Below are positions 44,483-59,544 of a stretch of DNA of 64,000 nucleotides, in pieces (within the stretch, counting starts at the first letter, position 1; each line of letters begins with the position of its first letter). Under the pieces are notes generated by a model. The model did no database searches. It saw only the letters and a program-made list of their open reading frames with translations, and was not told where the DNA came from. Location: positions 186,001 through 250,000 of the IMG/VR virus record IMGVR_UViG_3300037110_000087. One strand, written 5' to 3'. The position numbers and the translations under genes were made by a program.

Positions 44483-47035
44483 CTAAGAGCATTTGCTCCA
44501 ACCACAACCAGATCCCTTTATACCCTCAGGACCACCACAACCAACGCAACCATCGACGTAAACGATCTTGCTGCCACACTCAGGGCAAAGCTTGGTGCCC
44601 AGCAGTTCCGGCTTGGTGATGTATTTCTTCAATACCCGTGCTATTGCTGCAGAGTATTCAACCAGACTACCACTATTCTCCTGAAGATCCTTGACAATGA
44701 ATTCTACAGGGATCCCATGTCTTAATTCTCTGCAAATCGAGCGGGTGAGTTGTCTCTGATTCTCTTCATCGTAGATTTCTTGAAGATCAGAAATGTTCTC
44801 AATACCATTACCTTTGATCTTCACCGCCAAGCTATAACGTTTCTTTGAGTTGCGCTTGATCTCAGCATGCTCTACTTCATTGGGACTGGGTAACTCGATA
44901 TTCTGTCCCGCGAAGATCTCGTAGGGCTTTCCCTTTAGTAGACCGACTACCACACCCCACAATTGGCCTTTCACTCTCACTTGATAGACATCACCGGGAA
45001 GAGTGGTGGGCCGTTTCGGTGAAATATTGTGAACGATCTCGGTGGGCCGTTCGTCCTTCTTGACAGTCTCAGTGGAGGACGAAACTAAAACTCCATCACG
45101 TGATCCATCTACGTAGACGGTCAGCCCCTTCAATCCCAGCTTCCAGCCCAGCATGTAGACTTCCTGGACCTGTTCCACTGTCGATCCCTTGGGCATATTG
45201 ATGGTCTTAGAAATTGAATGATCAATATGTCGCTGGATTGCAGCCTGGAGTTCCACACCTTTGAGATAATCAATCTCAGCAGAGGTCACGAAATAATCAG
45301 GTAGGACCTTTTTCAGTTCGGCATTAGCTTCTGCAATTGACATATTATCAAAACAGGCAGGAAGAACCATGTCATTAGCAGTGAGATACTGCAGGACCAC
45401 TGGGGAGATGACCTTGAATTTGGTCCATTTGTCGCCCATGGCATCAGTTCGATCAACTCTCGCACCAACTTCATTGACATTGATTTTGCGGAAACGTTCA
45501 AAAATCCAATCAAAGAAGGGTTCAATACCTGAAGCAGTCTGAGAAGCTAAAGCGACCGTTCCTGTTGGAGCATTGGTCAGATTAGCAATATTTCTACGAC
45601 CAAAAAGTCTGATCTTCTCCTGAAGCCAATGAGGAAGCCGTTTGATAAAGGGACATTTAATATCAGTTTCCCAACTCCAACCTTTGAAAGCCCCACGTTC
45701 ATCGGCTAGTTCAGCACTGGCTTCATAACTAGCAACCTTTTGAATACCATAGAGCTTATCACAGAAGGCAATAGCTTCATCAGAATCATAGCGAATACCA
45801 AGAGCGATGAGAACATCTGCTAGGGCATGTGTGCCCATCCCAGTTCTACGTCCATTCTTCCCAGCATCGTAGATCTTAGACCAGAGAGCTATCTCATCCG
45901 TGTCATCGGTGATATCACGGATCTTGCTAACTGCTTCAAGCTCAAGTTCCACCAAATCATCAGATAAACGCTGGACGAACTTGATATCCTGGTAGAATTG
46001 ATCAAAATCAAACTCAGAGAACTGAGTAAATGCCTTCTTGACCCAGCCCATGAGATTGTTGGAAATTAAACGACAGGAGTCATACATCGAAAGAAAGATC
46101 TCACTACATGGGTTAGTGGAAACACATTCAAACCCCTTGTAGTAATGAGCAGGAAGCTCCCGGCAAGCTGTATCCCAGAACAGAATTCCGGGTTCAGCAG
46201 TCTTGTTAGCAGAGGTCACAATCAGGGTCCAAAGATCCCTAGCCTTGATCTCTCTGGTGATTTCTGCCTCTTCAATCGGTACATCACAGGGCCATTGCAG
46301 CATGAACTGAGCATCAGCTTCTACCGCCATCATAAAATCATCACATACTTGAACCGAGACATTAGCCCCAGTCACCTTAGTGAGATCATGCTTCATGGTC
46401 ACAAAGTTCTCGATATCTGGGTGTCTGATATCAAGTGAGATCATTGTAGCTCCAACTCGCCCACCTTGACCAATCATTCTAGTAATATGAGAGATGAAGT
46501 CAGAGAAGCAAGGGACACCACTACTGATACGAGCGGCATTGTTGACTGGTGCTCCCATTGGTCGGAGAGTAGAAAGACTCACCCCGCAGCCACCACGCCT
46601 CTTGAAAATGGAAGCCATTTCATTACCAGTTCTAAAGATCCCAGTAATGGAATCCTTCGGTGATGGGACCACGAAACAGTTAGACAATGATTGAAGCTGG
46701 TAAGGGTTGCCCATGGCAGACATTGGTGAACCCTGAGGGACTACCTTCTTAAATCGGTCCAGGAGATCACGGACACGATTGTAAAACTTCTCCTCATCAG
46801 TCCAAGGACTGAGTTTCATCTCGATCCTAGTGAATTCTCTAGCTAAACGATCATGCATATCTGCAGGAGTTTTTTCTAGGTACTGGCCTTGTTTATTCTT
46901 TAAAAGGTATTTCTTTGCTACTGTAGTTGCTGCTAACTCGTCACCGCCAAAGTATTTAATAGATTCAAATTCTACCTCTTCTTTCGTGAATATAGACAAA
47001 CTTCCCGCCGGGACAAGACTCCCAGTACTATTCAT
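44483..47035 (-). CDS. nrdJ: Class II (adenosylcobalamin-dependent) ribonucleotide reductase
   Basis: SLSNCFV, RRGGCG, TGANVSV, AEPG, TNPCSE, APTGT, ISKTIN, KGLTVY, C-terminal CPEC...WSKC. Confidence 0.92.
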   Translation of the reverse strand: MNSTGSLVPAGSLSIFTKEEVEFESIKYFGGDELAATTVAKKYLLKNKQGQYLEKTPADMHDRLAREFTRIEMKLSPWTDEEKFYNRVRDLLDRFKKVVPQGSPMSAMGNPYQLQSLSNCFVVPSPKDSITGIFRTGNEMASIFKRRGGCGVSLSTLRPMGAPVNNAARISSGVPCFSDFISHITRMIGQGGRVGATMISLDIRHPDIENFVTMKHDLTKVTGANVSVQVCDDFMMAVEADAQFMLQWPCDVPIEEAEITREIKARDLWTLIVTSANKTAEPGILFWDTACRELPAHYYKGFECVSTNPCSEIFLSMYDSCRLISNNLMGWVKKAFTQFSEFDFDQFYQDIKFVQRLSDDLVELELEAVSKIRDITDDTDEIALWSKIYDAGKNGRRTGMGTHALADVLIALGIRYDSDEAIAFCDKLYGIQKVASYEASAELADERGAFKGWSWETDIKCPFIKRLPHWLQEKIRLFGRRNIANLTNAPTGTVALASQTASGIEPFFDWIFERFRKINVNEVGARVDRTDAMGDKWTKFKVISPVVLQYLTANDMVLPACFDNMSIAEANAELKKVLPDYFVTSAEIDYLKGVELQAAIQRHIDHSISKTINMPKGSTVEQVQEVYMLGWKLGLKGLTVYVDGSRDGVLVSSSTETVKKDERPTEIVHNISPKRPTTLPGDVYQVRVKGQLWGVVVGLLKGKPYEIFAGQNIELPSPNEVEHAEIKRNSKKRYSLAVKIKGNGIENISDLQEIYDEENQRQLTRSICRELRHGIPVEFIVKDLQENSGSLVEYSAAIARVLKKYITKPELLGTKLCPECGSKIVYVDGCVGCGGPEGIKGSGCGWSKCS

Positions 47036-47152: not shown

Positions 47153-47968
47153 CTATTTTTGCCTTCGTAGGTATTCTTCTTCTAAATCCCAACAGGGCAT
47201 ACTTCGGCGCGATCTTTCTATGCCCATGACTACCAAAGAGGATTTTTTTCTAATTCCCTCATTATCGGATAAATCTTGATATCTGGTTGTTATTCCTTTG
47301 ATCATTTTCTTTTGATTCGATTCATCCAAGCTGGCAAACAATAAAGAGTATTCTCTATCAACTAAAATGGACTCAATCACCTGTTTTACAGATCTAATTG
47401 GCTCGTTTGTTTCAACAAAAAGCGGATCTACCTTTTCAAAACAAATTTGACCTAAATGGCCTCTTACCTCAGAATCTTGATTAAAATAACTAATCATTTT
47501 ATCAGAGGTTTCTTTATTTTCCGCCTTTTCTTGCCTTTTTACATCCCTTTTACTTTTCGGAGAGTCCACCAGATGAGTCAGTTCGTGGACAATGACCGGC
47601 ATCAACCATTCTTTAATTAGCGAAGGTCTGCCCAAAGAAAAATAAAACATACCAATATGGTCAAGATTAAACCTGAAACTGATAGTTCCATCAGATTTGT
47701 TGGTCATCCCTTCAAAAGGCGAACCACCGGACGTATTTTTTCCCCCTACCAATTCACAGATCAAAGTTATTACTAAGTTCACTAGATCATGTTTGTAATC
47801 CATTAATTCAATTGATAGATCTAGGGTGTTTAACACTCCCGGTTTAGAAATCAAATTGATATTAGGAATACCAGAAACTAACTCTTTGAGAGCACTTAGA
47901 AGTCTGGCTTCCTTTTCGGCATCCAAACCCAAATCAATTGGACGAGTGGCTGTGATTCTTAGCTTCAT
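47153..47968 (-). CDS. Zincin metallopeptidase with Ala7 leader (MKLRITA)
   Basis: IVHELTH...YFNQDSEVRGHLGQI, similar to both zincin domains of 5713-8241. Confidence 0.7.
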   Translation of the reverse strand: MKLRITATRPIDLGLDAEKEARLLSALKELVSGIPNINLISKPGVLNTLDLSIELMDYKHDLVNLVITLICELVGGKNTSGGSPFEGMTNKSDGTISFRFNLDHIGMFYFSLGRPSLIKEWLMPVIVHELTHLVDSPKSKRDVKRQEKAENKETSDKMISYFNQDSEVRGHLGQICFEKVDPLFVETNEPIRSVKQVIESILVDREYSLLFASLDESNQKKMIKGITTRYQDLSDNEGIRKKSSLVVMGIERSRRSMPCWDLEEEYLRRQK

Positions 47969-48600
47969 TTAATGCACAGAACAGCTTTTTTGTTGGCAGC
48001 CGCTAATTCATCACTGGCATTAGCGTTCCATCGATAAGGACACATTTTATAAGTTCTTGCATAAATCCAAAATTTCTTCACATGCTCAAGTAGTTCAGGG
48101 AATTCCTGGAGACAGAAACGTTCAGACTCAGCAATCAGGATATCCTGAATCCCAACATCAGGGCCACCCTCGACCAGATAGAAGAAAGTGGCATCTACAC
48201 GGTCCGAGAGTTTAACGAGAGCCTTTACCCGACCACCGAATAGTGGCTCCCCCTCATCCAATCCTCTCCGCCTCCAGAAATCGTTCTCAAGCTCCCCAAT
48301 AATATGACCTGCGCCCTTTTGATTCAGGGCCACTTTGACATTGGTAGGAATATCACCAGTTGCTTCGATCTCAGGCAGATCGTGAGTCAGGCAGAATTGA
48401 TAGCCCTCAGCCAATTCTTGCACATTAAACCGATCAGCGAGTCGTGCTTCCAGGAAAGAAAAGATCAGGCCAATCTGTCCAAGGTGTTCTGAAAGGGATT
48501 GTTTACGTGGCATTCTAACCAAGTGCCAGCGAGTCAAACCATTAACATCTGCAATATCACCAACACTTACTTCTTTGAAAGGATCAAATCGTCTTTCCAC
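47965..48600 (-). CDS. datZ: HD-domain dNTP hydrolase, DatZ-like dATPase
   Basis: RWHLV...QSLSEH, THDLPEIEATGDIPT, VKLSD; YfbR/DatZ pattern, 1.3 kb from purZ. Confidence 0.72.
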   Translation of the reverse strand: MERRFDPFKEVSVGDIADVNGLTRWHLVRMPRKQSLSEHLGQIGLIFSFLEARLADRFNVQELAEGYQFCLTHDLPEIEATGDIPTNVKVALNQKGAGHIIGELENDFWRRRGLDEGEPLFGGRVKALVKLSDRVDATFFYLVEGGPDVGIQDILIAESERFCLQEFPELLEHVKKFWIYARTYKMCPYRWNANASDELAAANKKAVLCIK

Positions 48601-48691
48601 TATGGACTCCCTGGATATTGTTTGTACTTAGTTAACCTAGAAATCGTTATCGTAACGTGATGGGTTCGTATATAATTAACAGGTAAGGATT

Positions 48692-48709
48692 GGGCCTCTT
48701 TCGAGGCCC
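48692..48709 (-). terminator. hairpin after glycosyltransferase
   Basis: GGGCCTC-TTTC-GAGGCCC. Confidence 0.55.
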
Positions 48710-48714
48710 TTTCT

Positions 48715-49815
48715 TTAATGGTAGAGATCTTCAATCTCCTTTAACCATTGATGTAATGAGTGCTTGCTGTAATTGTCCAAACTTCTCTGGCAAATCACTT
48801 GATGTATTGCTAGTTTTCTCATCCACCAAACGCGCAACATCTTCCTGATGATATCTCGACTATCCGTGGGATCAGCTTGAGTATGCCGAGGTGACCAGAG
48901 GACTTCTTTCGAAGTAACAATTGGGAGGCCCACATGGGTCATATCAGCGCCTACGATATTGAAAGTCTCTGAGAAACTAACTTGGAGTCCGATATCCATG
49001 GTCTTCAGTACTTCTAAAAATTGTTCGTGGGGGTACCAACCATGCTCTACTAGTTCATGACCTGAGAGTTTGGAGAACAACATCCGCAAATTCTTAAGGA
49101 TCTCCTTGCTACCTGCTCCCTCGATTCGTCCACCATTAATATGGAACCTGAGTTTCTTGCCTTTGAGTTCAGCAAACTTAAGGGCAGCGATCGCTTGCAT
49201 TAGATGGTTCTTCAGAGGTCTAATAGCTCCGAAGCAAGCAGCATCAAGATATTCATCCTCGACTTTTTCGGCCCCACGCTTCTTGTGGTCATGAGCATAA
49301 ATATTGGGAAAGAAAACTACCCGGTCCTTTCTCTCAGGGAAAGCCGAATTAACCATAATGGTCATGTCGCGGAGAGAACGGTAGGAATTCGCTGATACGA
49401 AGACATTTGGGTGTCTAAGATACTCAATGGTCCAGTCCATTACCACCCCTTCCTGGGCAGCAAACGGAATCTCTGAGTGATTCCTGATAATCCACTTCAC
49501 TTTAGGATGGAGCGGAAGTAAATCAAGGAATTTACTAGGCACTACCCAATAAGCCTCAATAATGACAATATCAGGTCTGAATAGAGTCACTTCACGGTCA
49601 ATGAAACTATTGTCCTGCACATGAACCAGTTTGGCATCAACCTTCCCGGTTCCCTTGAGAGCTTCACAGACGAATCTAGCACTATTGAACAAGCCAGAAC
49701 TCATCTCTTCGCCTTTGCCTTTATTGGGAGGAATGTCAGAGTATGGCCCCCAGGTATTTTCTCGATGCTTCAATACGAACAGAACTTTAGGGTTCCGTTT
49801 CATCTCTTGATCCAT
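48715..49815 (-). CDS. GT-B fold (GT4-like) glycosyltransferase
   Basis: FGAIRPLKN, HGWYPH, QVSFSETFNIVGAD...GLPIV. Confidence 0.8.
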   Translation of the reverse strand: MDQEMKRNPKVLFVLKHRENTWGPYSDIPPNKGKGEEMSSGLFNSARFVCEALKGTGKVDAKLVHVQDNSFIDREVTLFRPDIVIIEAYWVVPSKFLDLLPLHPKVKWIIRNHSEIPFAAQEGVVMDWTIEYLRHPNVFVSANSYRSLRDMTIMVNSAFPERKDRVVFFPNIYAHDHKKRGAEKVEDEYLDAACFGAIRPLKNHLMQAIAALKFAELKGKKLRFHINGGRIEGAGSKEILKNLRMLFSKLSGHELVEHGWYPHEQFLEVLKTMDIGLQVSFSETFNIVGADMTHVGLPIVTSKEVLWSPRHTQADPTDSRDIIRKMLRVWWMRKLAIHQVICQRSLDNYSKHSLHQWLKEIEDLYH

Positions 49816-49883
49816 TATACTCACCCCTACCAATAGGATATCATCCTATTGGTAGTAACCTCTGTGGTTACGGGGTATACAGC

Positions 49884-49908
49884 AAAGCCCGGAGATCCTC
49901 CGGGCTTT
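49884..49908 (-). terminator. terminator after purZ
   Basis: AAAGCCCGGAG / CTCCGGGCTTT. Confidence 0.65.
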
Positions 49909-49922
49909 TACTGCTTGAATTA

Positions 49923-51254
49923 TTAGATCAGTTCAATCAGTTCCGATCTCTTTGCTCCAGTGCCAAGATAAGCAATCTTGGCTCTCTGATGAACACCCTG
50001 ATAGAACTGGGTGTCATTGACCCATTTGACGAATTCGTGGACATTTGGGTACTCCCTCAGGTCGTCCATGGTCATCGGACCCTTCACCCCTGCGATATTA
50101 GCATCCAGATAATTCAGGAAGTTGATCGTGATATGAGTGGGCATGCAGCTCATGGTCGAGGTTCGCAGCTGAATGGCAGAGCGGGTGAATACCCGACGAA
50201 TGCGCTTAGTCAGGCTGGTCTTCTCCTTGACTGCGTTGCCAGTCATCCGTGAAACCTCTTCCCATGAGATTTCCTGCTGATCAGGGTAGCAACCACCGGA
50301 ACTGCCTAGGTTGATGACACCATTGAAGATTTTATCATCGATCGTCCAACCCACGAACTTCTCTGCCTCATTCTTGATTTCCTGTGCGGTTACGGTGATA
50401 TTGAGAGCACCATTCCCGGCCCACACTAACGTGGTCGGATCGTAGCCCTTCTCAGATCCGTCCGCGAATTTGAAGACGATACTGCCACCACTGTTCGAAC
50501 CATCACCCACCCGGATTGGGAAAGTGCGTAGGTTGAGAATCACTGAACCCAACAACTGATAGGGAACGAAGGACATCCCAGCGAATGCGGAAGGATTGAT
50601 ATTACGTGAAGTACAGGCTGGATAGAACTTACCTACTTCAGTAGTAGACTTTGGATCATCAAAGATCAGGTCCATAGAGAGATCAAATCCCTGAGCAGTT
50701 TCCAGAAGGCCGGTCTGACCCTGCTGCAACCATTCGACTACTAATCTCTGCACATTGGCGATATAGGGACGAAGCTCAGGGACCTGATCAGCAGTGCGTG
50801 TCATCTTATGTCGCATGACTTTGTGTCCCTTGGCCGCGCCTACGCCAGACATAGTAGAACCAATACATCCAAGGTTCTCCTCTTCCCATTTGATCTGTTC
50901 AGCAGTGATGACCGGCATGTTGGGATGGATGAAGAGTCGCCCTGGTTCCATCTTCCAATCTTCAATTTCCTTGAGCATCTGTGGCAGCTGAACTGCAGCA
51001 TCCGCACCCATTACAACCTTGGTGCTGCAGCAAGAAACAGCAGAGGGGAGTGCATTAAACTTGTAGGTATCGAAGCCATTGACTGGTTCATCAAATACGG
51101 TAATATGGGATGCGTTGTGTGAATTATGCGAGATTGCGAAGTCAAGATTTTCAACACTGGCTAGATAGTCAGAGAACTTGCCTTTGCCTCCGCTTCCCCA
51201 TGATCCGGAATCAATGGGTCCAACTGCTAGCTTGCCAGAGTGCAAAATGCTCAT
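49923..51254 (-). CDS. purZ: PurZ, N6-succino-2-amino-dAMP synthase (PurA paralogue)
   Basis: WGSGGKGK (Ser replaces PurA catalytic Asp), NASH, GSTMSGVG, ETAQG, YPACTSR, RTFPIRVG, YPDQQEISWE, TKRIRRVF, NFLNY. Confidence 0.85.
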   Translation of the reverse strand: MSILHSGKLAVGPIDSGSWGSGGKGKFSDYLASVENLDFAISHNSHNASHITVFDEPVNGFDTYKFNALPSAVSCCSTKVVMGADAAVQLPQMLKEIEDWKMEPGRLFIHPNMPVITAEQIKWEEENLGCIGSTMSGVGAAKGHKVMRHKMTRTADQVPELRPYIANVQRLVVEWLQQGQTGLLETAQGFDLSMDLIFDDPKSTTEVGKFYPACTSRNINPSAFAGMSFVPYQLLGSVILNLRTFPIRVGDGSNSGGSIVFKFADGSEKGYDPTTLVWAGNGALNITVTAQEIKNEAEKFVGWTIDDKIFNGVINLGSSGGCYPDQQEISWEEVSRMTGNAVKEKTSLTKRIRRVFTRSAIQLRTSTMSCMPTHITINFLNYLDANIAGVKGPMTMDDLREYPNVHEFVKWVNDTQFYQGVHQRAKIAYLGTGAKRSELIELI

Positions 51255-51353
51255 AAGCCCTTCTCCATTTCAATCTGTAAGTGATTGCCTATCTCTAACC
51301 CTTGTTCAACTGGCCTGTAATCACTTCTTTACTCAATTGACAAATAACAGATC

Positions 51354-51662
51354 TCAAACCAGATTCGATCTCTTCAATTGGGGTCTTTGGCACATATTGG
51401 TCCAAAAGCCTACCACGGTACCTTCCGCGCCTTTCACCAAGAAGTGCTTAGAGCGCATCCAGCCAGGGGCACTCTCTTGAGTAATATTTGGGGTCTTAGC
51501 AAGGGCTACCCGATCCCCTACCTTAAATGGAGCGAACCGCGACATCAGGAGGTCATAGCTAGCAACTAGCTGATCCAAATTCCATCCAATATCCCAGACA
51601 TTGAGTTTGGAAAATTCCTTGTATGCCTCGACAAGTTGTCTGACTTTTTCAACACTTGGCAT
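51354..51662 (-). CDS. hypothetical protein
   Basis: SD GGAGG. Confidence 0.6.
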   Translation of the reverse strand: MPSVEKVRQLVEAYKEFSKLNVWDIGWNLDQLVASYDLLMSRFAPFKVGDRVALAKTPNITQESAPGWMRSKHFLVKGAEGTVVGFWTNMCQRPQLKRSNLV

Positions 51663-51682
51663 TTCTACCTCCGGATATGACT

Positions 51683-51720
51683 AGCGGGTGTTAAGAGCAT
51701 CAACGATCTTAACACCCGCT
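51683..51720 (-). terminator. long hairpin
   Basis: AGCGGGTGTTAAGA / TCTTAACACCCGCT. Confidence 0.55.
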
Positions 51721-51726
51721 TGTTAG

Positions 51727-52770
51727 TTAGAAGACCTTGGCCCAATCCCTATCGAAACTGTCGCAGATCTTGTCCAGGGCTTTGTGCATGTAGACTGAAT
51801 CCTTATATTGCACACTGTCTACCATTAACGCAACCTCAATCTTTCTAGTATCACGACTGACCGAGAAGGTGAAAACATGAGGGCAAGTACAGGGGTCAAC
51901 TCGGGATTCCTTGACTTCGGGATTGTAACCATCATAACGACTCCTGAAAGCCACCTGCATCTCCTCAAGCATTGACTTGCCATGGAGAGTGACCGAAATG
52001 AGGAATTCCGGTTCGGTTTCCTTGGCAACCTGCGGCCTGAGTCTGAAAGAGAAGATACTAGGCATACCCGCATTACCGGCCCAGTGGGTGAAACCAAATA
52101 CTTGATTGCTCAAGGCTCCCTCGACAGTAGCTCCCTTTTCTTCCACTGGAACATAACCGAAGCTACTAGAAGCACTACACTGAAGGGTTCCATCAGTGAC
52201 AATAGAACTAGCACTGGTTGGAGTGCTCGTGTTTGCGGTGCTGCATGTGAACTGCATTCCTCTGAGGATATCTGAGGCTCCACCAGAAGCGCCAAGATTC
52301 ATACTCTGGGCCTCCACCCTACGGGAACCCAGCTTGAGTTCAGAACTGCACCAGGGATCCTTGCGATAGAAAGGTTCCCCCCATGTCTGAGCATATAGTT
52401 TATACTCCTTGCGCTCCCGGTGGACAGTGACAATAATATCACCATTGGAGGGATTGGTTGGATCAGCGACGGCATCATTATCCGCCTTGACGAACTTGAA
52501 TTTGCGATCAACATCGACAAATCGTTCGATATAATCGACATCACCCTTGTCTAGAATCAGTCCACCACCGCTGACATTAGCACCGTCGATGGAAATTTCC
52601 ACTCTGATACGGCAGTCATTCTGATTCTTGATCAGAAATTTATACTGGGTGTCGAAGGGGATGAACACTTCACAAGAGCGTCCACTTCTGTTCTTCCTTG
52701 GAGAGTACTCTCTCAAGGGCCGTTTCTGATCGTCGACAAGCGCGACAACTACGTTATCGTAATGCATCAT
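51727..52770 (-). CDS. hypothetical protein (beta-rich N-terminal domain)
   Basis: YKFLIKNQN..RIRVEISIDG, ERF...RKFKF, GATVEG; SD AGGAG. Confidence 0.7.
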   Translation of the reverse strand: MMHYDNVVVALVDDQKRPLREYSPRKNRSGRSCEVFIPFDTQYKFLIKNQNDCRIRVEISIDGANVSGGGLILDKGDVDYIERFVDVDRKFKFVKADNDAVADPTNPSNGDIIVTVHRERKEYKLYAQTWGEPFYRKDPWCSSELKLGSRRVEAQSMNLGASGGASDILRGMQFTCSTANTSTPTSASSIVTDGTLQCSASSSFGYVPVEEKGATVEGALSNQVFGFTHWAGNAGMPSIFSFRLRPQVAKETEPEFLISVTLHGKSMLEEMQVAFRSRYDGYNPEVKESRVDPCTCPHVFTFSVSRDTRKIEVALMVDSVQYKDSVYMHKALDKICDSFDRDWAKVF

Positions 52771-52867
52771 TTTCTACTCCTAATTTTAAAGTCGAGGGCT
52801 ACGACTAGTTGGTTAAAGCCCTGGGTGTTGATGCTTATTTAGTATAACATGTTCCAATTTCATTTAA

Positions 52868-53086
52868 TTAGAGAGGGTCAGTCAGCGCTAGCTTCTTCTC
52901 TATCTGTTTGATGCGCAAATACCGGCGCTCTTGGCGCTTTTCTGCTTCCGAGAATCCAGGGACGCCACAACACGGACAACATACTCCGCCGTCTTCCCAA
53001 AACTGCCGCTCTATTTCTCCAAGTCTAATATCCTCACGTTGTATCTTTGCTTTCAGGTTGGCTAGCTCTTCGCGTAATAAGCTCAT
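52868..53086 (-). CDS. small coiled-coil/Cys protein
   Basis: CCPCC. Confidence 0.55.
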   Translation of the reverse strand: MSLLREELANLKAKIQREDIRLGEIERQFWEDGGVCCPCCGVPGFSEAEKRQERRYLRIKQIEKKLALTDPL

Positions 53087-53182
53087 GTCACGCCGAAGTC
53101 CAAACGAGAACGAGAATTATTAGTATAATTGTCAATGCATCTTCTATTAATGAATGACCTGAATTTTTATAAGCTATGGTCA

Positions 53183-53914
53183 TCATATCAGCCCACCTAG
53201 TACATCATCTTCTGAATGGCCATCACGAGCAACAGCTTCACGAGCAGCAACAGGAATTTTAGCCAATTCCTCGGCAGTTAACATCCGCTCCCTGGTAATA
53301 CGTTTGAGATAAGTACCACGCTTGAAGAAGTCTGGATAATCATTCCAGTTGACTCCCTTAGCATGCAACATCTCGTGTTTTTCAGCACTGCCCTTTTTAT
53401 GGAGTTCCTTGTGGCTGTAGAATGCACCTGCGGCCATGGTGATGGAATTCTTGGTAGCATCCATTTCACGCCATTCGAGAACCTCGATAACAGTTTCAAT
53501 ATTGGGCACCTGCCAGACACGACAATCCAGGCATGGATATTTTCTAGCTTTCTCCGGAATTTCCCTTTCTAGATGTGCATTGAAAAACGCTGCGGCCAAG
53601 GATGGAAGAATGCTCGCGAGCTTGTGGATCCTTCCACCAAAAATCAACTCGTTCTTAGGTAGGAATACTAGAGTAATTTCGTCACTTTGTGTATAGCCTA
53701 AGTCCGCTTGGTTCTCGTCTATCAGATATTTGGTGGTTTCTATCATAAGTCTAGACAATCTCTCATCATAGGGTCTTTTTAATCCACGGGTGAAAGTATG
53801 CCAGGACTTCCCATCTAATCTCGCAATTATCGGCAAGCCTGGAATAAATAGTCGTCCAGCTTCGATCATTTCGAATTTCTTCATCCGATCGCCCAATTCA
53901 TCCGTGTAACCCAT
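53183..53914 (-). CDS. tRNA(His) guanylyltransferase Thg1-like (3'-5' polymerase)
   Basis: RLDGKSWHTFT, YTQSDEI, GRIHKL, DCRV, WREMDATKN, NWND. Confidence 0.9.
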   Translation of the reverse strand: MGYTDELGDRMKKFEMIEAGRLFIPGLPIIARLDGKSWHTFTRGLKRPYDERLSRLMIETTKYLIDENQADLGYTQSDEITLVFLPKNELIFGGRIHKLASILPSLAAAFFNAHLEREIPEKARKYPCLDCRVWQVPNIETVIEVLEWREMDATKNSITMAAGAFYSHKELHKKGSAEKHEMLHAKGVNWNDYPDFFKRGTYLKRITRERMLTAEELAKIPVAAREAVARDGHSEDDVLGGLI

Positions 53915-53916
53915 TT

Positions 53917-54690
53917 TTACCCCTCATATATTCCGCTTCTTATTACATGATAGCGAACTGAACTCGGACTGGTTCCGAATATTCTAGCTATCTCACTGCA
54001 GTTGTTTCCTTCTCTATAGAGTCTAACAAAATCTCCTTTGTTAGTAACATGGTTGGCTTGTTTGGTTATATCATGTTTGTATTCTTTGTACTTCCACTTG
54101 TAAGAATATTCTGGAACCGGACAATTTCCGATATAATCCAGAAATTCTTTTATACAAATATGTGGGATAATGGTCAAATACCCTTTATCCTTAGTGGAGC
54201 TGACTCTGGCTCTTCTTGCTCTGAATTGTGATAACTGAGGTAGAATGGTTTCATCAAGCTCGTCTTTGGTGAAACAGTTAGTTGCCAATTTAATATTCTG
54301 GCTACCCGCGTGAGTATCTAAATTACCATCTCCGATGTACCAAATAAGACAAGATAGCGAGGTTAATATAAGATCCTTCGGTATAATTTTGACATCGGGG
54401 TACCATTTATTCCTGATGGGGGCAAAAGTGATGTTCTGCTGGGTTTGGAATGAATATCTAGTATAAGTCTTGGTAGTTCTCCTATCATACACTAGTGTGG
54501 TCATGATTCCTGCGGGGGTGATTAAATTACTGAAGAATCTAGACACAAACTCGACATGAGATCTAATACTAGAAGAGTAGTGTAAAGAGGAACTCTCATT
54601 AGAGACTTTCTTAAGACATCCATCACCAAGAAGAGCGCCTTGGAGCGCCTCTAGTTGAATTGTGGTTAACTCTATTGGTTTATTTCTCAT
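53917..54690 (-). CDS. LAGLIDADG homing endonuclease (free-standing) with C-terminal HTH
   Basis: GALLGDG, WYIGDG, LATNCFT, YSYKW. Confidence 0.85.
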   Translation of the reverse strand: MRNKPIELTTIQLEALQGALLGDGCLKKVSNESSSLHYSSSIRSHVEFVSRFFSNLITPAGIMTTLVYDRRTTKTYTRYSFQTQQNITFAPIRNKWYPDVKIIPKDLILTSLSCLIWYIGDGNLDTHAGSQNIKLATNCFTKDELDETILPQLSQFRARRARVSSTKDKGYLTIIPHICIKEFLDYIGNCPVPEYSYKWKYKEYKHDITKQANHVTNKGDFVRLYREGNNCSEIARIFGTSPSSVRYHVIRSGIYEG

Positions 54691-54692
54691 AT

Positions 54693-54730
54693 TTTACTCC
54701 CCATTGTAGATTAACACAACGGGGAGTAAA
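54693..54730 (-). promoter_or_regulatory. hairpin sequestering the SD of the LAGLIDADG gene
   Basis: TTTACTCCCC / GGGGAGTAAA directly before ATG. Confidence 0.6.
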
Positions 54731-54758
54731 CCTGCCAAACATTATTCATCGAAATCAG

Positions 54759-54995
54759 TTATCCAATGACCTTGGTGTGAAACACGTGGTCTTTCAAATA
54801 ACAGAGGTCGTCCACCATGACCATGTTCTGTCCATTAGAATATTCGAAATGCAGATAGCCTTTCCAATGACTGCCATCGTCATGTCTTGCCAATCCCCGA
54901 TAAGAAGCCATTCGGAGAGTGTCATAGTTATCGCAGATGAGGTAGTTGTCTCCTTCGATCAGTTCTTCAGCCCTTGCCGGAATCAGGATTTTCAT
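54759..54995 (-). CDS. hypothetical protein
   Basis: from MKILIP, SD GGAG. Confidence 0.5.
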   Translation of the reverse strand: MKILIPARAEELIEGDNYLICDNYDTLRMASYRGLARHDDGSHWKGYLHFEYSNGQNMVMVDDLCYLKDHVFHTKVIG

Positions 54996-55464
54996 CGTCT
55001 CTCCAGAGAGTGTAGTCAGTAAGCGGAGGGAAACCAGGGAGATTGATCGCATACTTCGGATCAGTAGGCAAGATTGGAATCTTCTCTGTTTCTACCTTCT
55101 CATGTTCCGTTGGCAACCCAAATTTTTCCGCGATCTCTACGGCCAATGAGACTGTTGCAGCATCACCAACCACCGCATCCTTGGGATAGCCAAGTGAAGC
55201 CTCGAGAATCTGTTGGGTTTGCATCACTTCAAGCTCGTAGGTCGCATAGAGCTTCCGCATCCGACGATTCTCATCATCCACACCCTTGTAATACCAATGC
55301 TGCTGAGTCCCAGTGACTTCTAAGCCGCAGGCTGAACATTTGAACTTCGCATCTGCGTAAGGGACAACCGGACAGTCTGTTTCAGCCAGTAGAAAGACAT
55401 GAGGCATTCCCTTGCACAATGATTTACTTGATTGTTCGGTAGGTCTAAATGAATCGGTGTTCAT
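54967..55464 (-). CDS. hypothetical protein
   Basis: SD AAGGAG. Confidence 0.6.
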   Translation of the reverse strand: MNTDSFRPTEQSSKSLCKGMPHVFLLAETDCPVVPYADAKFKCSACGLEVTGTQQHWYYKGVDDENRRMRKLYATYELEVMQTQQILEASLGYPKDAVVGDAATVSLAVEIAEKFGLPTEHEKVETEKIPILPTDPKYAINLPGFPPLTDYTLWRDDENPDSGKG

Positions 55465-55508
55465 GTTGCTCCTTGTTTGCTACAGCATAAATTCTAACAA
55501 ATTCATCG

Positions 55509-55787
55509 TCAAGATTTAGACAAGGCCAAGGAGAATACAATATCGAGATAAGCGCTTTCAGGCATGCTCTCACAGCATTTGACAAAGTAATTGAACGAGA
55601 ACTCGTTCTGGATCATCAGAATCTCTTCGGCTGGATTCTCGGTAGTAGGGGTTTCGCCACCAATCCATCTTTCCATAACAATTCCAATCTGGCCTTCATC
55701 CATCTCATAGGTATAATCACCGAACTTGACTGATCCACCTTTAAATAAATACCTGAGAATATTTACGGAGCGCTTACCATCAGACAT
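55509..55787 (-). CDS. hypothetical protein
   Basis: overlap-coupled to mazZ. Confidence 0.6.
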   Translation of the reverse strand: MSDGKRSVNILRYLFKGGSVKFGDYTYEMDEGQIGIVMERWIGGETPTTENPAEEILMIQNEFSFNYFVKCCESMPESAYLDIVFSLALSKS

Positions 55788-56103
55788 GACTCATGACCCC
55801 CTTGCTATTGATCTTCCACTCCCTCTTCTCATTGATTTCAATCTTCTCAATCAATGCAAGACCAGAATCACCTCCGGTCTTGCCGACCTGATAAGCTAGG
55901 TCTAATACAAGGATGAAAAGGTCAGCATGTTCGTGAAGATCTCCGGGATCCTTCGTGATTTCAAGAATCTCCTCCCAGAATTTATCAAATACAGATTGGG
56001 GAGTGCGATGTGGATAAACCCGATCTGCCCAACCAGTTACTCTCGTCTGAATCAGATCGAAAGCACTTAAGATTATTTTCCGTTCCTCGTCCGTAAAAAT
56101 CAT
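55780..56103 (-). CDS. mazZ: MazZ / DUF550 dGTP(dATP) pyrophosphohydrolase
   Basis: W..xxYP.R.P....K..EEI.E.....D..E.AD..IL.LDLA...G....K..IN..R.W....G.M.H, the MazG-like all-alpha pattern of MazZ. Confidence 0.8.
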   Translation of the reverse strand: MIFTDEERKIILSAFDLIQTRVTGWADRVYPHRTPQSVFDKFWEEILEITKDPGDLHEHADLFILVLDLAYQVGKTGGDSGLALIEKIEINEKREWKINSKGVMSHV

Positions 56104-56570
56104 TAAGGCAGAGCCTGAATAACGATCTTGTTTGGACTACGATGGAGAGCATGGGCAGGAAGAACTTCTCCCTCAGGGGGTGGGGTGGAAGGAGCAGGGG
56201 CTTCTTCTTGAACAAAATTCTCCCGCCATTGATTTGCTTCCTCCCTTGCATTTTCCCGGCGTTCCCGAATCAAAGCCTTGAAGATATTCAGGTAAAGAAT
56301 CAGATCGTCGGCACGACCTTCGATATTCTCACTATATTCAAAGGTTTCATCAATGGCGACGTCGCCCACATAAGTGCTGATGGAATCGAAGTGCTTGGCA
56401 GCGTAGACGAACCAGATTTGCAAAGGATCGAGATTAATTCGTTCCGCATTGCGTTTGAAGTTGGCTAACTGATCCGATGATCCGGCGTATTCCCGGCCTT
56501 TGGTCTTGGTAAGGTCCATCATCTTCTGGTGGGTTTCTTCCAGCAGTTTGATAAAAGCTTCTTTATCCAA
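56103..56570 (-). CDS. Nucleotide-modification-associated domain 1 (Nmad1/DUF1599-like, MazG superfamily)
   Basis: KGREYA....LANF, K.FDSI, E.IEGRADDLILY. Confidence 0.65.
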   Translation of the reverse strand: MDKEAFIKLLEETHQKMMDLTKTKGREYAGSSDQLANFKRNAERINLDPLQIWFVYAAKHFDSISTYVGDVAIDETFEYSENIEGRADDLILYLNIFKALIRERRENAREEANQWRENFVQEEAPAPSTPPPEGEVLPAHALHRSPNKIVIQALP

Positions 56571-57539: not shown

Positions 57540-58091
57540 CTAACCCTGTTCTACTTTAACCATGACTTTCGCTCTGGCTTTATCAATAATCTGTTGGAAC
57601 TTATCATAGAGATGTGCCCTTGGACTCATTGGTAATCTGACCAATATCAATCCAGCTTCTTCCACTGTTTTGTTACCCTTCTTTTGATTGTGGATCCGGC
57701 AGCATGCCACCAGATTCTTCCAAGTGGAGCTTCCTCCACGACTACTTGGGATCAGATGGTCCAGGGTATTCCCGGTTCGGGTACATTGTAATCCAGTGGT
57801 TTCATCAATATACTGACATTTATAATCATCTCTTCTCAAGATACTGCGTGATCCATCACCAAGAAGTTTAACTTCAGGGACCGCAGCGACCTGATGGTAG
57901 ACAATAATCTCAAATGGTTTGAGAATGTCTTCTAGTTTGTTTGAGGTAGAAAAGTCATAGGGATTTAAGATAACCGCTCTACCATTGATTATTGCCTTAA
58001 CACAATGATACCGGCCCAATTCACAGATAGGAAGGTAGTTTCGATCTAGAGCTATGATTGGGGATCGTTTATGAAATTTTCCCTTGTGCAT
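57540..58091 (-). CDS. HNH endonuclease
   Basis: RRDDYKCQY, TLDHLIPSSRGG, WKNLVACC..HNQKKG. Confidence 0.88.
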   Translation of the reverse strand: MHKGKFHKRSPIIALDRNYLPICELGRYHCVKAIINGRAVILNPYDFSTSNKLEDILKPFEIIVYHQVAAVPEVKLLGDGSRSILRRDDYKCQYIDETTGLQCTRTGNTLDHLIPSSRGGSSTWKNLVACCRIHNQKKGNKTVEEAGLILVRLPMSPRAHLYDKFQQIIDKARAKVMVKVEQG

Positions 58092-58824: not shown

Positions 58825-59544
58825 CTAACCAGGGATAATTTCAAGGAACTTATCAAACAACATTGGGATCTTCGACTGGAGCTGTTTAAAGTATTCGTTA
58901 CTAACGACTCTCATATCAGGATGAGCAGTCTTAGGTAATCTAAGTCCAAAGAAATTTCTCAGACTGCGAATATTCATCGTTACCACGAATTCCGTCTTCA
59001 GCCCATTGGGAAGAATATCTCTGGCTTCTTGAGGAGTAAGGCCGTATTCACCTTCTTTATCCACCCAATCGCAGTAGGTCTGTAGACAACCCCACTGCTG
59101 CATATACCATTCGCGCTTGAATTTGTCAGATTTATCATTGATCCAAGCCGGGTAAACAATGGACCCAGCCTTCTTCAGATAGTTCACATAACGAGTGCTT
59201 TCCTGAGTATAAGCTGCGATCCGATGGCGAACCCATTCGTGACTGACCCCACGATTTGTGGTAACTAGTGCAGTAATACTGACATGTTCAAGAGTGGATT
59301 CATGTCCATTTGACAAGATAATATTAAGGATCTTCTCATAAGAAGTATCATTAATATTATCTTCGCTCTTATAGGCAACCCGGATGATACGTTCCAGTTT
59401 CTTTAGGATTTTGATCCCGTCGATTCGTTCACCCAAGAATTTGGTATCTACCTTGGGCAACACAATATCCGCATCACCATCAAAAACTCCGGAACGCTTG
59501 TCTCTCCGTAAACTTTCCTTCAAGTCATTCAAGTCAACTAGCAT
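58825..59544 (-). CDS. thyX: Flavin-dependent thymidylate synthase
   Basis: GHESTLEH, RGVSHEWVRHR, QESTRY, ARDILP, AHPDMR. Confidence 0.95.
   Translation of the reverse strand: MLVDLNDLKESLRRDKRSGVFDGDADIVLPKVDTKFLGERIDGIKILKKLERIIRVAYKSEDNINDTSYEKILNIILSNGHESTLEHVSITALVTTNRGVSHEWVRHRIAAYTQESTRYVNYLKKAGSIVYPAWINDKSDKFKREWYMQQWGCLQTYCDWVDKEGEYGLTPQEARDILPNGLKTEFVVTMNIRSLRNFFGLRLPKTAHPDMRVVSNEYFKQLQSKIPMLFDKFLEIIPG

What the first reader, a model, noticed from the sequence alone, without database searches (positions are those of the whole stretch)
47965..56103. Complete 2-aminoadenine (Z-genome) pathway, purZ + datZ + mazZ, in a jumbo-type phage
Seen: the PurA paralogue (49923-51254) has WGSGGKGK where PurA has WGDEGKGK, and ends its nucleotide pocket with NFLNY. 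An HD hydrolase lies 1.3 kb downstream (47965-48600) and a DUF550/MazG-like protein 4.5 kb upstream (55780-56103). Established: in S-2L, phiVC8 and SH-Ab 15497, PurZ (Asp to Ser) makes the dZMP precursor from dGMP, MazZ supplies dGMP and DatZ removes dATP. Asn rather than Asp in NFx[N/D]Y fits ATP-using PurZ rather than GTP-using PurZ0. Inference: this phage replaces A with Z. The Z phages I know are small sipho/podoviruses with a compact cluster, whereas here the genes are dispersed in separate transcription units of an apparently very large genome.
Basis: partly seen in the sequence, partly recalled or inferred. Interest (0 to 1): 0.92.

Follow-up and report, generated by a model that had tools for sequence, protein, structure and literature searches.

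The report
Z-base DNA pathway in jumbo phage
A 307-kb uncultured peat phage carries all three phage enzymes (PurZ, DatZ, MazZ) known to replace adenine by 2-aminoadenine in DNA, so it is probably the first jumbo-sized phage recognised with such a genome, though no chemistry has been done.

Summary
On the minus strand, three intact genes lie within 8.1 kb: a PurA-like synthetase (49923-51254), an HD hydrolase (47965-48600) and a DUF550 pyrophosphatase (55780-56103). Each finds the matching solved Z-pathway enzyme as its best PDB hit: phiVC8 PurZ, S-2L DatZ and S-2L MazZ. The catalytic residues and most of the specificity residues described for those enzymes are kept. On a tree the synthetase falls on the PurZ side of the PurZ/PurZ0 split (99/96), in a new long-form clade with a 60-residue insertion. 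The closest relatives of the HD protein among 1.84 billion representatives sit in compact PolA-PurZ-DUF550-HD clusters. The ORF coupled upstream of mazZ (56103-56570) is the split-off N-terminal domain of a MazZ fusion protein found in such clusters. The genome is one 307,124-bp record, 98% complete, with a jumbo-phage terminase and a family A polymerase unlike DpoZ. "Dispersed" is overstated. The genes are co-directional, span 2.6% of the genome, and are interspersed with homing endonucleases. PurZ also occurs in other 200-436 kb virus records. I found no paper that links PurZ to jumbo phages. There is no chemical evidence for Z. Verdict: a new member of a known kind, in a new genome-size class.

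The parts
49923..51254 (-). purZ: N6-succino-2-amino-2'-deoxyadenylate synthase homologue (443 aa). This is a long form with a roughly 60-residue beta-rich insertion at residues 252-316.
   Evidence: PF00709 3.5e-17 and phrog_1211 'PurZ' 4.9e-35. The best PDB sequence hit is phiVC8 PurZ 6fm1 at 2.4e-30, against P. horikoshii PurA at 3e-12. The AF2 model has pLDDT 86.9, and its top Foldseek hit is 6fm1 (E 3.6e-24, TMt 0.81). Ser replaces PurA Asp13. T262, Y244, W252, P233 and the N-F-x-N-Y pocket are kept. The tree places it on the PurZ side of the split.
47965..48600 (-). datZ: HD-domain dATP triphosphohydrolase homologue (211 aa)
   Evidence: PF12917 9e-8 and phrog_7076 1e-11. The best PDB hit is S-2L DatZ, by sequence (4e-4) and by fold (8.6e-5, TMt 0.74). 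R19, W20, Q29, H34, H66, D67, E70, G74, K81, K116 and D119 are kept. I22 is Leu, as in the phiVC8 homologue, and P79 is Asn. The nearest relatives, at 8.7e-23 and 3e-20, lie in compact PolA-PurZ-DUF550-HD clusters.
55780..56103 (-). mazZ: stand-alone DUF550/MazZ-1-type (d)GTP pyrophosphohydrolase homologue (107 aa)
   Evidence: PF04447 6e-10. The only significant PDB hit is S-2L MazZ 7ody at 1.6e-6. Sixteen of 21 pocket residues are kept: metal ligands E34, E35, E38, E50 and D53, guanine N2 determinants I56 and D60, and R83, K76, N80, W85 and H95. The top 15 listed GenBank phage hits are Z phages, led by Acinetobacter phages Barton (42%) and SH-Ab 15497 (41%).
56103..56570 (-). orf155: uncharacterised protein translationally coupled to mazZ through a TAATG overlap. 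It is probably a fourth module component and is the split form of the N-terminal domain of MazZ fusion proteins.
   Evidence: phrog_6802 1.8e-17. It is 39% identical over 148 aligned residues (48% over the first ~100; E 2e-32) to the N-terminal part of a 317-aa protein in L078. The C-terminal half of that protein is a MazZ domain, and a DatZ homologue follows it. The same fusion occurs in L079, and a stand-alone copy sits next to purZ in L035. There is no Pfam or PDB match, and the Atlas gives only a DUF1599 hint.
47153..47968 (-). ORF of 271 aa whose start overlaps the datZ stop by 4 nt. It contains an HExxH motif and its function is unknown.
   Evidence: It has no Pfam, PHROG or PDB match. 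Whether it belongs to the pathway has not been shown.
48715..49833 (-). ORF of 372 aa between datZ and purZ, with weak glycosyltransferase-like similarity.
   Evidence: PF13692 E 0.002, below the cut-off. There is no PDB hit. Whether it belongs to the pathway has not been shown.
49883..49905 (-). Stem-loop followed by TTTG, directly downstream of purZ (GCCCGGAG-GAT-CTCCGGGC). It is terminator-like.
   Evidence: The consensus scan overall gave no more sites than shuffled sequence.
48692..48709 (-). GC-rich stem-loop between the GT-like ORF and datZ.
44483..47035 (-). Ribonucleotide reductase large subunit, in the same co-directional nucleotide-metabolism block.
   Evidence: PF02867 6.7e-91 and phrog_84.
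58825..59541 (-). ThyX thymidylate synthase, in the same block.
   Evidence: PF02511 2.1e-42.
53917..54690 (-). Free-standing LAGLIDADG homing endonuclease between purZ and mazZ. Together with the HNH endonuclease at 57540-58091, it is a plausible cause of the loosening of the cluster.
   Evidence: PF03161 3.7e-16 and phrog_11023. HNH: PF14279 1.2e-9.

Best explanation
The window encodes a working 2-aminoadenine (Z) deoxynucleotide pathway of the PurZ/DatZ/MazZ-1 type in a 307-kb jumbo phage. The proposed steps are as follows, and all of them are inferred from homology.

- MazZ hydrolyses dGTP to dGMP.
- PurZ condenses dGMP with aspartate, using ATP or dATP, to give N6-succino-2-amino-2'-deoxyadenylate.
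- Host PurB, guanylate kinase and NDP kinase finish dZTP. The phage has no PurB and no guanylate kinase.
- DatZ destroys dATP, so the phage's own non-DpoZ family A polymerase has little but dZTP to put opposite T. This is the arrangement in cyanophage S-2L, whose polymerase does not discriminate.

The virion DNA is therefore predicted to be largely or wholly ZTGC. The ORF coupled to mazZ probably acts with it on the nucleotide pool.

Shown here: gene presence, residue conservation, fold, phylogeny and the context of relatives. Inferred: enzyme activities and DNA composition.
For: - Family, PDB and fold searches all point to PurZ, DatZ and MazZ.
- PurZ has Ser at PurA Asp13, T262 and the ATP-type N-F-x-N-Y pocket.
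- PurZ groups with the PurZ side rather than PurZ0+PurA at 99/96. Its own 18-row clade has 100/99 support.
- All 120 listed metagenomic homologues carry Ser at this position.
- DatZ keeps all metal and triphosphate ligands and W20.
- The nearest relatives of DatZ anywhere lie in canonical compact Z clusters.
- Weak tblastn hits of DatZ in GenBank phages are mostly in PurZ phages.
- MazZ keeps all five metal ligands plus I56, D60 and R83.
- MazZ is closest to the MazZ domains of Z phages, including the biochemically characterised SH-Ab 15497 protein.
- orf155 plus mazZ equals a fusion protein found next to DatZ in compact clusters.
- The three genes are single-copy and lie within 8.1 kb (p = 0.002).
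- The triad alone suffices to put Z into E. coli DNA (PMC8342488).
- The PurA domain is the domain most strongly associated with restriction-resistant dZ contigs in aquatic viromes (bioRxiv 10.1101/2025.10.22.683976).
Against: - There are no chemical or signal-level data on the DNA. Only assembled contigs were available.
- All three proteins are divergent. PurZ is about 24-33% identical to phiVC8, and DatZ about 24-31%.
- The DatZ match to the PDB (4e-4) is barely better than the match to YfbR (5.5e-4).
- The 2-amino-excluding residue I22 is Leu, which YfbR also has, and P79 is Asn.
- This PurZ clade is uncharacterised. It has a 60-residue insertion in the loop that faces the catalytic pocket.
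- F12 is Trp, as in PurA.
- The polymerase is not DpoZ-like: 22% identity over 207 residues.
- The closest PurZ relatives show no recognisable datZ or mazZ within 10 kb.
- The tree has no archaeal PurA in it.
Confidence: 0.8

Rival explanations
1. The genes are real homologues, but substitution is only partial or conditional. The pathway raises a dZTP pool that competes with dATP, because this DatZ (Leu22, Asn79) is a weaker or less specific dATPase and the polymerase has no Z preference. The DNA would then be a mixture of A and Z.
For: I22 is replaced by Leu and P79 by Asn. PolA is not DpoZ-like. Expressing the S-2L triad in E. coli gives only partial replacement (PMC8342488).
Against: The phiVC8 DatZ homologue also has Leu at position 22, and that phage has a Z genome. 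S-2L reaches full substitution with a non-selective polymerase (PMC8065100). All triphosphate and metal ligands are intact.
Confidence: 0.12
2. The genes are ordinary auxiliary nucleotide-metabolism genes with no Z. On this reading the PurA-like enzyme makes adenylosuccinate from IMP to boost AMP supply. The HD protein is a YfbR-like 5'-deoxynucleotidase, and the DUF550 protein is a house-cleaning or alarmone pyrophosphatase. They would sit together only because this is the phage's nucleotide-metabolism block.
For: The genes lie in a block with RNR and ThyX. The HD protein scores almost equally against YfbR. DUF550 also occurs in many non-Z phages. Huge phages are known to carry purine-metabolism genes.
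Against: The catalytic Asp13 of PurA is Ser, and the GTP-binding [ST]KxD motif is N-F-L-N-Y. PurZ structures are the best hits by sequence and by fold. The nearest relatives of the HD protein and of MazZ are those of Z clusters. MazZ keeps the guanine-N2 determinants I56 and D60. The orf155-MazZ fusion next to DatZ in relatives ties these genes to one module.
Confidence: 0.05
3. The PurZ-like enzyme makes 2-aminoadenine nucleotides for something other than bulk DNA replacement. Examples would be ribo-Z for RNA or a signalling or anti-defence nucleotide. The 60-residue insertion would alter sugar or substrate choice.
For: The insertion sits at the loop next to the substrate pocket. S-2L MazZ and PurZ show no strict 2'-OH discrimination (PMC8342488).
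Against: DatZ keeps W20, the residue that excludes ribonucleotides, and this only makes sense for the dNTP pool. No precedent is known to me.
Confidence: 0.03

Closest known systems
Z-cluster of cyanophage S-2L (datZ-mazZ-purZ; PDB 6ZPA, 7ODY, 7ODX; PMC8065100, PMC8342488)
   Same: It has the same three enzyme families. MazZ is the stand-alone MazZ-1/DUF550 type, as in S-2L. There is no DpoZ, so A exclusion would rest on dATP depletion. No phage PurB was found in this genome.
   Different: The S-2L genes are contiguous in a 45-kb siphovirus. Here they are spread over 8.1 kb with 11 other ORFs between them, in a 307-kb genome. PurZ is 84 residues longer (443 against 359 aa), has an insertion domain and lies in another clade. 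DatZ has Leu22 and Asn79. The replicative polymerase is a 979-aa PolA, not a PrimPol.
Vibrio phage phiVC8 PurZ (DgsS; PDB 6FM1) and its cluster with DpoZ
   Same: It is the best sequence and fold match to the window's PurZ. The HD homologue also has W-x-L at positions 20-22. The ATP-type N-F-x-N-Y pocket is shared.
   Different: phiVC8 is a 39-kb podovirus with DpoZ and MazZ-2. The window's polymerase shares only generic family A similarity with DpoZ, and its MazZ is of the MazZ-1 type.
Acinetobacter phage SH-Ab 15497 DUF5664-DUF550 dATP/dGTP pyrophosphohydrolase (Zhou et al. 2021, from my own knowledge; Pfam PF18909 + PF04447)
   Same: Its DUF550 domain is among the closest cultured-phage relatives of the window's MazZ, at 41% identity. 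It also pairs an N-terminal accessory domain with DUF550.
   Different: The window has no DUF5664. Instead, an unrelated phrog_6802 domain is encoded as a separate, translationally coupled ORF. In relatives L078 and L079 that domain is fused to MazZ.
PurZ0 systems of actinophages (PDB 7VF6; DutZ/DmtZ partners; PMC12884076)
   Same: PurZ0 has Ser at the PurA Asp13 position and the PurA fold.
   Different: PurZ0 has a GTP-type pocket (T-M-L-D-Q), and it branches with PurA on the far side of the 99/96 split in the unrooted tree. The window's protein has N-F-L-N-Y and lies in the PurZ clade. 7VF6 ranks only 15th by fold. The genome has no NDT/DmtZ.
Uncultured huge phages in IMG/VR with Ser-type PurZ (for example records of 436, 427, 377 and 363 kb with terminal repeats)
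   Same: They are jumbo-sized genomes with a Ser-type PurZ and a YfbR-like HD that are not adjacent.
   Different: They form a different PurZ clade with an NFVQY pocket. Their HD has Y/F20 and S/T22. They have no DUF550. Their genes are 100-230 kb apart rather than within 8 kb.

Membership tests
PurZ (2-aminoadenylosuccinate synthetase) | Adenylosuccinate-synthetase fold | tested here: met
   PF00709 above the cut-off. The AF2 model has pLDDT 86.9. Foldseek matches PurZ and PurA structures at E 1e-24 to 1e-13.
PurZ (2-aminoadenylosuccinate synthetase) | Catalytic Asp13 of PurA replaced by Ser in the P-loop | tested here: met
   WGSGGKGK against E. coli WGDEGKGK.
PurZ (2-aminoadenylosuccinate synthetase) | [quoted passage not shown] | tested here: inconclusive
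   S14 and T262 are kept. F12 is Trp, which PurA also has. Other clade members have H, A or F there.
PurZ (2-aminoadenylosuccinate synthetase) | ATP-type base pocket (phiVC8 F295, Y298; N-F-x-N/Q-Y) in place of the GTP-type [ST]KxD | tested here: met
   N-F-L-N-Y, against PurZ0 T-M-L-D-Q and PurA T-K-L-D-V.
PurZ (2-aminoadenylosuccinate synthetase) | Phylogenetic placement with PurZ rather than PurZ0 or PurA | tested here: met
   The split between (PurA + PurZ0) and the rest has 99/96 support, and the query lies in the rest. Caveat: no archaeal PurA sequence was available. As a substitute, phmmer gives phiVC8 PurZ 2.4e-30 against P. horikoshii PurA 3e-12.
PurZ (2-aminoadenylosuccinate synthetase) | Activity: dGMP + Asp + ATP gives dSMP | not testable with these tools
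   This needs an enzyme assay.
DatZ (dATP triphosphohydrolase) | HD metal site (H34, H66, D67, D119, E70) and triphosphate ligands (R19, K81, K116) | tested here: met
   All are kept.
DatZ (dATP triphosphohydrolase) | W20, which excludes ribonucleotides | tested here: met
   Trp is kept.
DatZ (dATP triphosphohydrolase) | I22, which excludes the 2-amino group of G and Z | tested here: inconclusive
   Leu is a conservative change and is also found in the phiVC8 homologue. E. coli YfbR has it too.
DatZ (dATP triphosphohydrolase) | P79 on the base-covering loop | tested here: not met
   It is Asn. PMC8065100 says this position is conserved or conservatively substituted in close homologues.
DatZ (dATP triphosphohydrolase) | Nearest relatives encoded next to purZ or mazZ | tested here: met
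   P0122 lies in a PolA-PurA-orf-DUF550-HD cluster, and P0123 and P0124 lie directly after MazZ fusion genes.
MazZ-1 / DUF550 (d)GTP pyrophosphohydrolase | Metal ligands E34, E35, E38, E50, D53 and R83 | tested here: met
   All are kept.
MazZ-1 / DUF550 (d)GTP pyrophosphohydrolase | [quoted passage not shown] | tested here: met
   Both are kept. N20, which is unique to S-2L, is Tyr, as in the Acinetobacter phage homologue.
Z-cluster as defined for S-2L-like phages | datZ, mazZ and purZ contiguous | tested here: not met
   Eleven other ORFs lie between them. They share a strand and span 8.1 kb.
DpoZ-containing Z phages | DpoZ-subfamily family A polymerase | tested here: not met
   The only DNA polymerase is a 979-aa PolA. 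Its nearest relatives are in SP-10 and the Erwinia jumbo phages. It is 22% identical to phiVC8 DpoZ over 207 residues. This is not required for a Z genome, because S-2L lacks DpoZ.
PurZ0 system | GTP-type pocket and DutZ/DmtZ partners | tested here: not met
   The pocket is N-F-L-N-Y, and there is no NDT domain in the genome.
Jumbo phage (over 200 kb, tailed) | Genome size and phage hallmark genes | tested here: met
   307,124 bp at 98% completeness. TerL is about 30% identical to those of PaBG and the Erwinia jumbo phages. Tail-fibre proteins are present.

The most novel reading that the evidence does not exclude
Adenine-free ZTGC DNA may not be confined to small sipho- and podoviruses. It may be used by several independent lineages of jumbo and huge phages of 200-436 kb. 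Their whole phage-encoded replication and repair machinery (PolA, NAD-dependent ligase, topoisomerase II, SbcCD) would then work on Z-DNA. Their pathway genes can be scattered over more than 100 kb and may include uncharacterised parts: the phrog_6802 domain, the PurZ insertion domain, Y20/S22-type DatZ, and an unknown dGMP supplier where DUF550 is absent.
Probability: 0.55. Interest if true: 0.75.

Novelty: new member of a known kind. Interest (0 to 1): 0.62.

Why it matters
If the DNA really is ZTGC, this would be by far the largest natural Z genome. Characterised Z phages are about 40-50 kb, and the largest PurZ-like-bearing GenBank phages I saw listed are 83 kb and 168 kb, neither shown to be Z. 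It would show that a complete, complex, phage-encoded replisome and packaging machine runs on 2-aminoadenine DNA. That is directly useful for building larger synthetic Z-DNA replicons.

It would also add a defence-evasion strategy to jumbo-phage biology. Discussion there is dominated by the phage nucleus, and a 2026 review of jumbo phages does not mention aminoadenine.

The new PurZ clade with its insertion domain, and the MazZ-associated phrog_6802 domain, are concrete enzymology targets.

Tried and rejected
- Near-identity DNA search against GenBank phages found no match.
- Word-indexed homologue searches for DatZ and MazZ returned only the query. The exhaustive search then solved this for DatZ.
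- I could not obtain archaeal PurA sequences for the tree. The genome-contig scan gave only three MAG contigs.
- I tested whether orf155 is DUF5664 or MazZ-2. BLASTP, Pfam and hhalign were all negative. A profile search against the PDB was also negative.
- I looked for phage-encoded PurB, guanylate kinase, NDT, IMPDH, DUF5664 and PolB in the genome. None was found.
- The promoter and terminator consensus scan found no more sites than shuffled sequence.
- I looked for datZ and mazZ near purZ in the closest PurZ relatives. None was recognisable within 10 kb, and their full records are not held, so co-occurrence across the clade is untested.
- I looked for raw or long reads that might betray a modified base. 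Only assembled contigs exist.
- The GT-like and HExxH ORFs gave no informative matches.
- I considered the PolA as a DpoZ and rejected it.

Full report
**Observation**

- The PurA paralogue lies at 49923-51254 (443 aa). It has WGSGGKGK and NFLNY.
- The HD protein lies at 47965-48600 (211 aa).
- The DUF550 protein lies at 55780-56103 (107 aa).

The stated spacings are correct: 1.3 kb and 4.5 kb. Pfam assigns PF00709, PF12917 (YfbR-like) and PF04447 (dATP/dGTP pyrophosphohydrolase), each above its curated cut-off. PHROGs assigns the first two to the 'PurZ' family (4.9e-35) and the 'dATP triphosphohydrolase' family (1.1e-11).

Against all PDB sequences the best hits are:
- phiVC8 PurZ at 2.4e-30, in two stretches separated by an insertion in the query;
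- S-2L DatZ at 4e-4, only marginally ahead of E. coli YfbR at 5.5e-4;
- S-2L MazZ at 1.6e-6.

**Genome**

The window is bases 186001-250000 of a single 307,124-bp IMG/VR virus record. CheckV estimates 98% completeness. No terminal repeat was found. GC content is 45%, and a simple caller finds about 423 ORFs.

- The large terminase subunit is about 30% identical to those of Pseudomonas phage PaBG and the 260-kb Erwinia phages.
- There are collagen-like tail-fibre proteins, topoisomerase II, an NAD-dependent ligase and SbcC.
- There is one family A DNA polymerase and no family B polymerase.

'Jumbo phage' is therefore correct. An independently assembled 106,975-bp contig from the probable source run (peat metagenome) reproduces 47900-53800 exactly. 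Identical short pieces occur in three other peat and freshwater runs. The arrangement is therefore not an assembly chimera.

**PurZ**

I aligned the protein with phiVC8, S-2L, Acinetobacter and Klebsiella PurZ, two actinophage PurZ0 and E. coli PurA. It has the following features.
- Ser stands at the PurA Asp13 position.
- It keeps T262, Y244, W252 and P233 (phiVC8 numbering). These are residues that the metaGPA preprint lists as discriminating PurZ from PurA.
- It has N-F-L-N-Y where PurZ0 has T-M-L-D-Q and PurA has T-K-L-D-V. This is the aromatic ATP-type pocket rather than the guanine-binding Asp.

The statement that PurZ0 uses GTP and PurZ uses ATP rests on my own knowledge of Tong et al. 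2023. PMC12884076 words it the other way round.

An AlphaFold model built on 26 homologues has pLDDT 86.9 and pTM 0.83. It matches phiVC8 PurZ best (E 3.6e-24, TM 0.81 on the target). P. horikoshii PurA and S-2L PurZ follow, and PurZ0 comes only at rank 15.

A careful maximum-likelihood tree of 91 sequences was rooted on E. coli PurA.
- It separates PurA + PurZ0 from everything else with 99/96 support.
- The query lies in an 18-sequence clade (100/99) of long forms (420-465 aa).
- That clade belongs to a larger clade (100/97) that includes the PurA-like gene of the cultured 168-kb Flavobacterium phage MaF61.
- The characterised PurZ enzymes form a separate clade (98/93).

No archaeal PurA could be included.

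The long forms carry a roughly 60-residue insertion (query residues 252-316). The model predicts it as a small beta-rich domain. It sits in the loop between the PIRVGD and GSSG-x-YPDQ motifs, which in phiVC8 is the disordered stretch facing the catalytic pocket. Its role is unknown.

**DatZ**

I mapped the protein onto the S-2L residues described in PMC8065100.
- It keeps R19, W20, Q29, H34, H66, D67, E70, G74, K81, K116 and D119.
- I22 is Leu. The phiVC8 homologue and E. coli YfbR both have Leu at this position.
- P79 is Asn.

Residues alone therefore do not separate a dATPase from a YfbR-like nucleotidase. Context does.
- In an exhaustive HMMER search of 1.84 billion representatives, the best relative (8.7e-23, 38% identity) is encoded in a compact PolA - PurA-like (360 aa) - ORF - DUF550 - HD cluster.
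- The next two relatives directly follow MazZ fusion genes.
- Of 51 weak tblastn hits in GenBank phages, most are in PurZ phages.
- The predicted fold matches DatZ first (8.6e-5), then OxsA and YfbR.

**MazZ**

Sixteen of the 21 pocket residues listed for S-2L MazZ are kept. They include:
- all five metal ligands (E34, E35, E38, E50, D53);
- the guanine-N2 determinants I56 and D60, which define MazZ-1;
- R83, K76, N80, W85 and H95.

The 15 best listed GenBank phage hits are all Z phages. They are led by Acinetobacter phages Barton (42%) and SH-Ab 15497 (41%), the second of which has a DUF550 protein that was characterised biochemically.

**A fourth component**

The 155-aa ORF at 56103-56570 ends in TAATG, which overlaps the mazZ start codon. 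A local tblastn and BLASTP gave these results.
- It is 39% identical over 148 aligned residues, and 48% over the first ~100, to the N-terminal part of a 317-aa protein (E 2e-32).
- The C-terminal half of that protein is a MazZ domain, and a close DatZ relative follows it (L078).
- The same fusion occurs in L079.
- A stand-alone copy follows purZ in L035.

The window therefore holds the split form of a MazZ fusion protein. The domain is phrog_6802. It has no Pfam or PDB match and is not detectably related to DUF5664. It was not found in the other 28 IMG/VR PurZ records.

**Arrangement**

All genes from 42684 to beyond the window end are on the minus strand. The stretch from the ribonucleotide reductase (44483-47035) to ThyX (58825-59541) is a nucleotide-metabolism block. 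A LAGLIDADG and an HNH homing endonuclease and a Thg1-like gene are interspersed in it.

The triad spans 8,139 bp, or 2.6% of the genome. The chance probability is 0.002 for three single-copy genes. It is a loosened cluster rather than a dispersed one.

Stem-loops follow purZ (49883-49905) and precede datZ (48692-48709). The consensus scan, however, found no more promoters or terminators than shuffled sequence. Separate transcription units are therefore possible but not shown.

**Mechanism**

The best-supported reading is the established pathway.
- MazZ supplies dGMP.
- PurZ makes the succinylated precursor with ATP or dATP.
- Host PurB, guanylate kinase and NDP kinase complete dZTP. None of PurB, guanylate kinase, NDT, IMPDH or DUF5664 is encoded by the phage.
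- DatZ removes dATP.

The polymerase shares only generic family A similarity with DpoZ. Exclusion of A would therefore depend on the nucleotide pool, as in S-2L (PMC8065100). All activities and the DNA composition are inferred.

**Wider distribution and novelty**

- All 120 listed metagenomic homologues of the PurZ have the Ser P-loop.
- Close relatives (52-57% identity) lie on contigs of 118, 324 and 377 kb.
- A scan of IMG/VR found 29 loci, ten of them on records of 197-436 kb. Four of these are complete with terminal repeats.
- All five complete records also have a YfbR-like HD gene. In the four huge ones it lies 100-230 kb from purZ.
- Those huge-phage HD proteins carry the Y/F20 and S/T22 combination. 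The metaGPA preprint found that combination enriched in experimentally dZ-enriched contigs.
- None of the 29 records has DUF550.

Among GenBank phages, every listed PurZ or PurZ0 carrier is 83 kb or smaller, apart from MaF61. I found no paper that combines PurZ, aminoadenine or diaminopurine with jumbo, huge, giant or mega phages in a relevant way. A 2026 review of jumbo phages does not mention the subject.

The pathway itself is known. What is new is the host genome class, a new PurZ clade with an insertion domain, and the MazZ-associated domain.

**Verdict**

- 'Dispersed' is overstated.
- Novelty: a new member of a known kind.
- Interest is moderate to high because of the size class and the testable enzymology.

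Noticed in passing
window 59973-62015 (-): An actin-like protein of the 'Volactin' family (PF25216, 3.5e-69) is interrupted by an intein that carries a LAGLIDADG domain.
   Followed up: no
window 53183-53914 (-) and 53917-54690 (-): A Thg1-like 3'-5' nucleotidyltransferase (phrog_4717, 6e-71) is followed 2 bp later by a free-standing LAGLIDADG homing endonuclease with an HTH tail. A related contig (L081) also has Thg1, NAD-dependent ligase and RNA ligase near its purZ.
   Followed up: partly
window 30058-32118 (-): The NAD-dependent DNA ligase gene has 57.8% GC against 45% for the genome, which suggests recent acquisition.
   Followed up: no
L038, L039, L050, L052 (IMG/VR records of 436, 427, 363 and 377 kb) with HD loci L068, L064, L067, L066: Complete huge phages carry a Ser-type PurZ with an NFVQY pocket and a YfbR-like HD with Y/F20 and S/T22, 100-230 kb apart. 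They have no DUF550. They are candidate Z-genome huge phages with an unknown dGMP supplier.
   Followed up: partly
L018 4150-5229 and L019 4142-5221 (JGI contigs of 365 and 324 kb): An IMPDH/GMP-reductase-like gene lies 6 kb from a purZ that is 52-53% identical to the window's. It sits beside a Macro-domain gene and a radical-SAM gene. It may adjust the guanine nucleotide supply.
   Followed up: no
L021 19914-21257 and 31598-32953 (Flavobacterium phage MaF61, PQ858689): This cultured 168-kb phage has a 447-aa Ser-type PurZ-like gene (NFVNY) and its own adenylosuccinate lyase. It has no DUF550 and only a sub-threshold HD match. The paper describing it does not discuss these genes.
   Followed up: partly
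window 42684-43949 (-): A 421-aa ORF has a weak, sub-threshold match to the ADP-ribosyltransferase domain of polyvalent proteins (PF18760, E 4e-4).
   Followed up: no
window 51684-51719 and 54693-54730 (-): Long perfect stem-loops lie in the intergenic regions upstream of ORF 51354-51662 and of the LAGLIDADG gene. A recurring TTATACTA-like motif occurs upstream of several genes in the block.
   Followed up: no
PMC12884076, section 24: The paper states that PurZ0 and PurZ prefer 'ATP and GTP, respectively'. This is the reverse of what I recall from the original PurZ0 description, and the reverse of what the pocket residues suggest.
   Followed up: no
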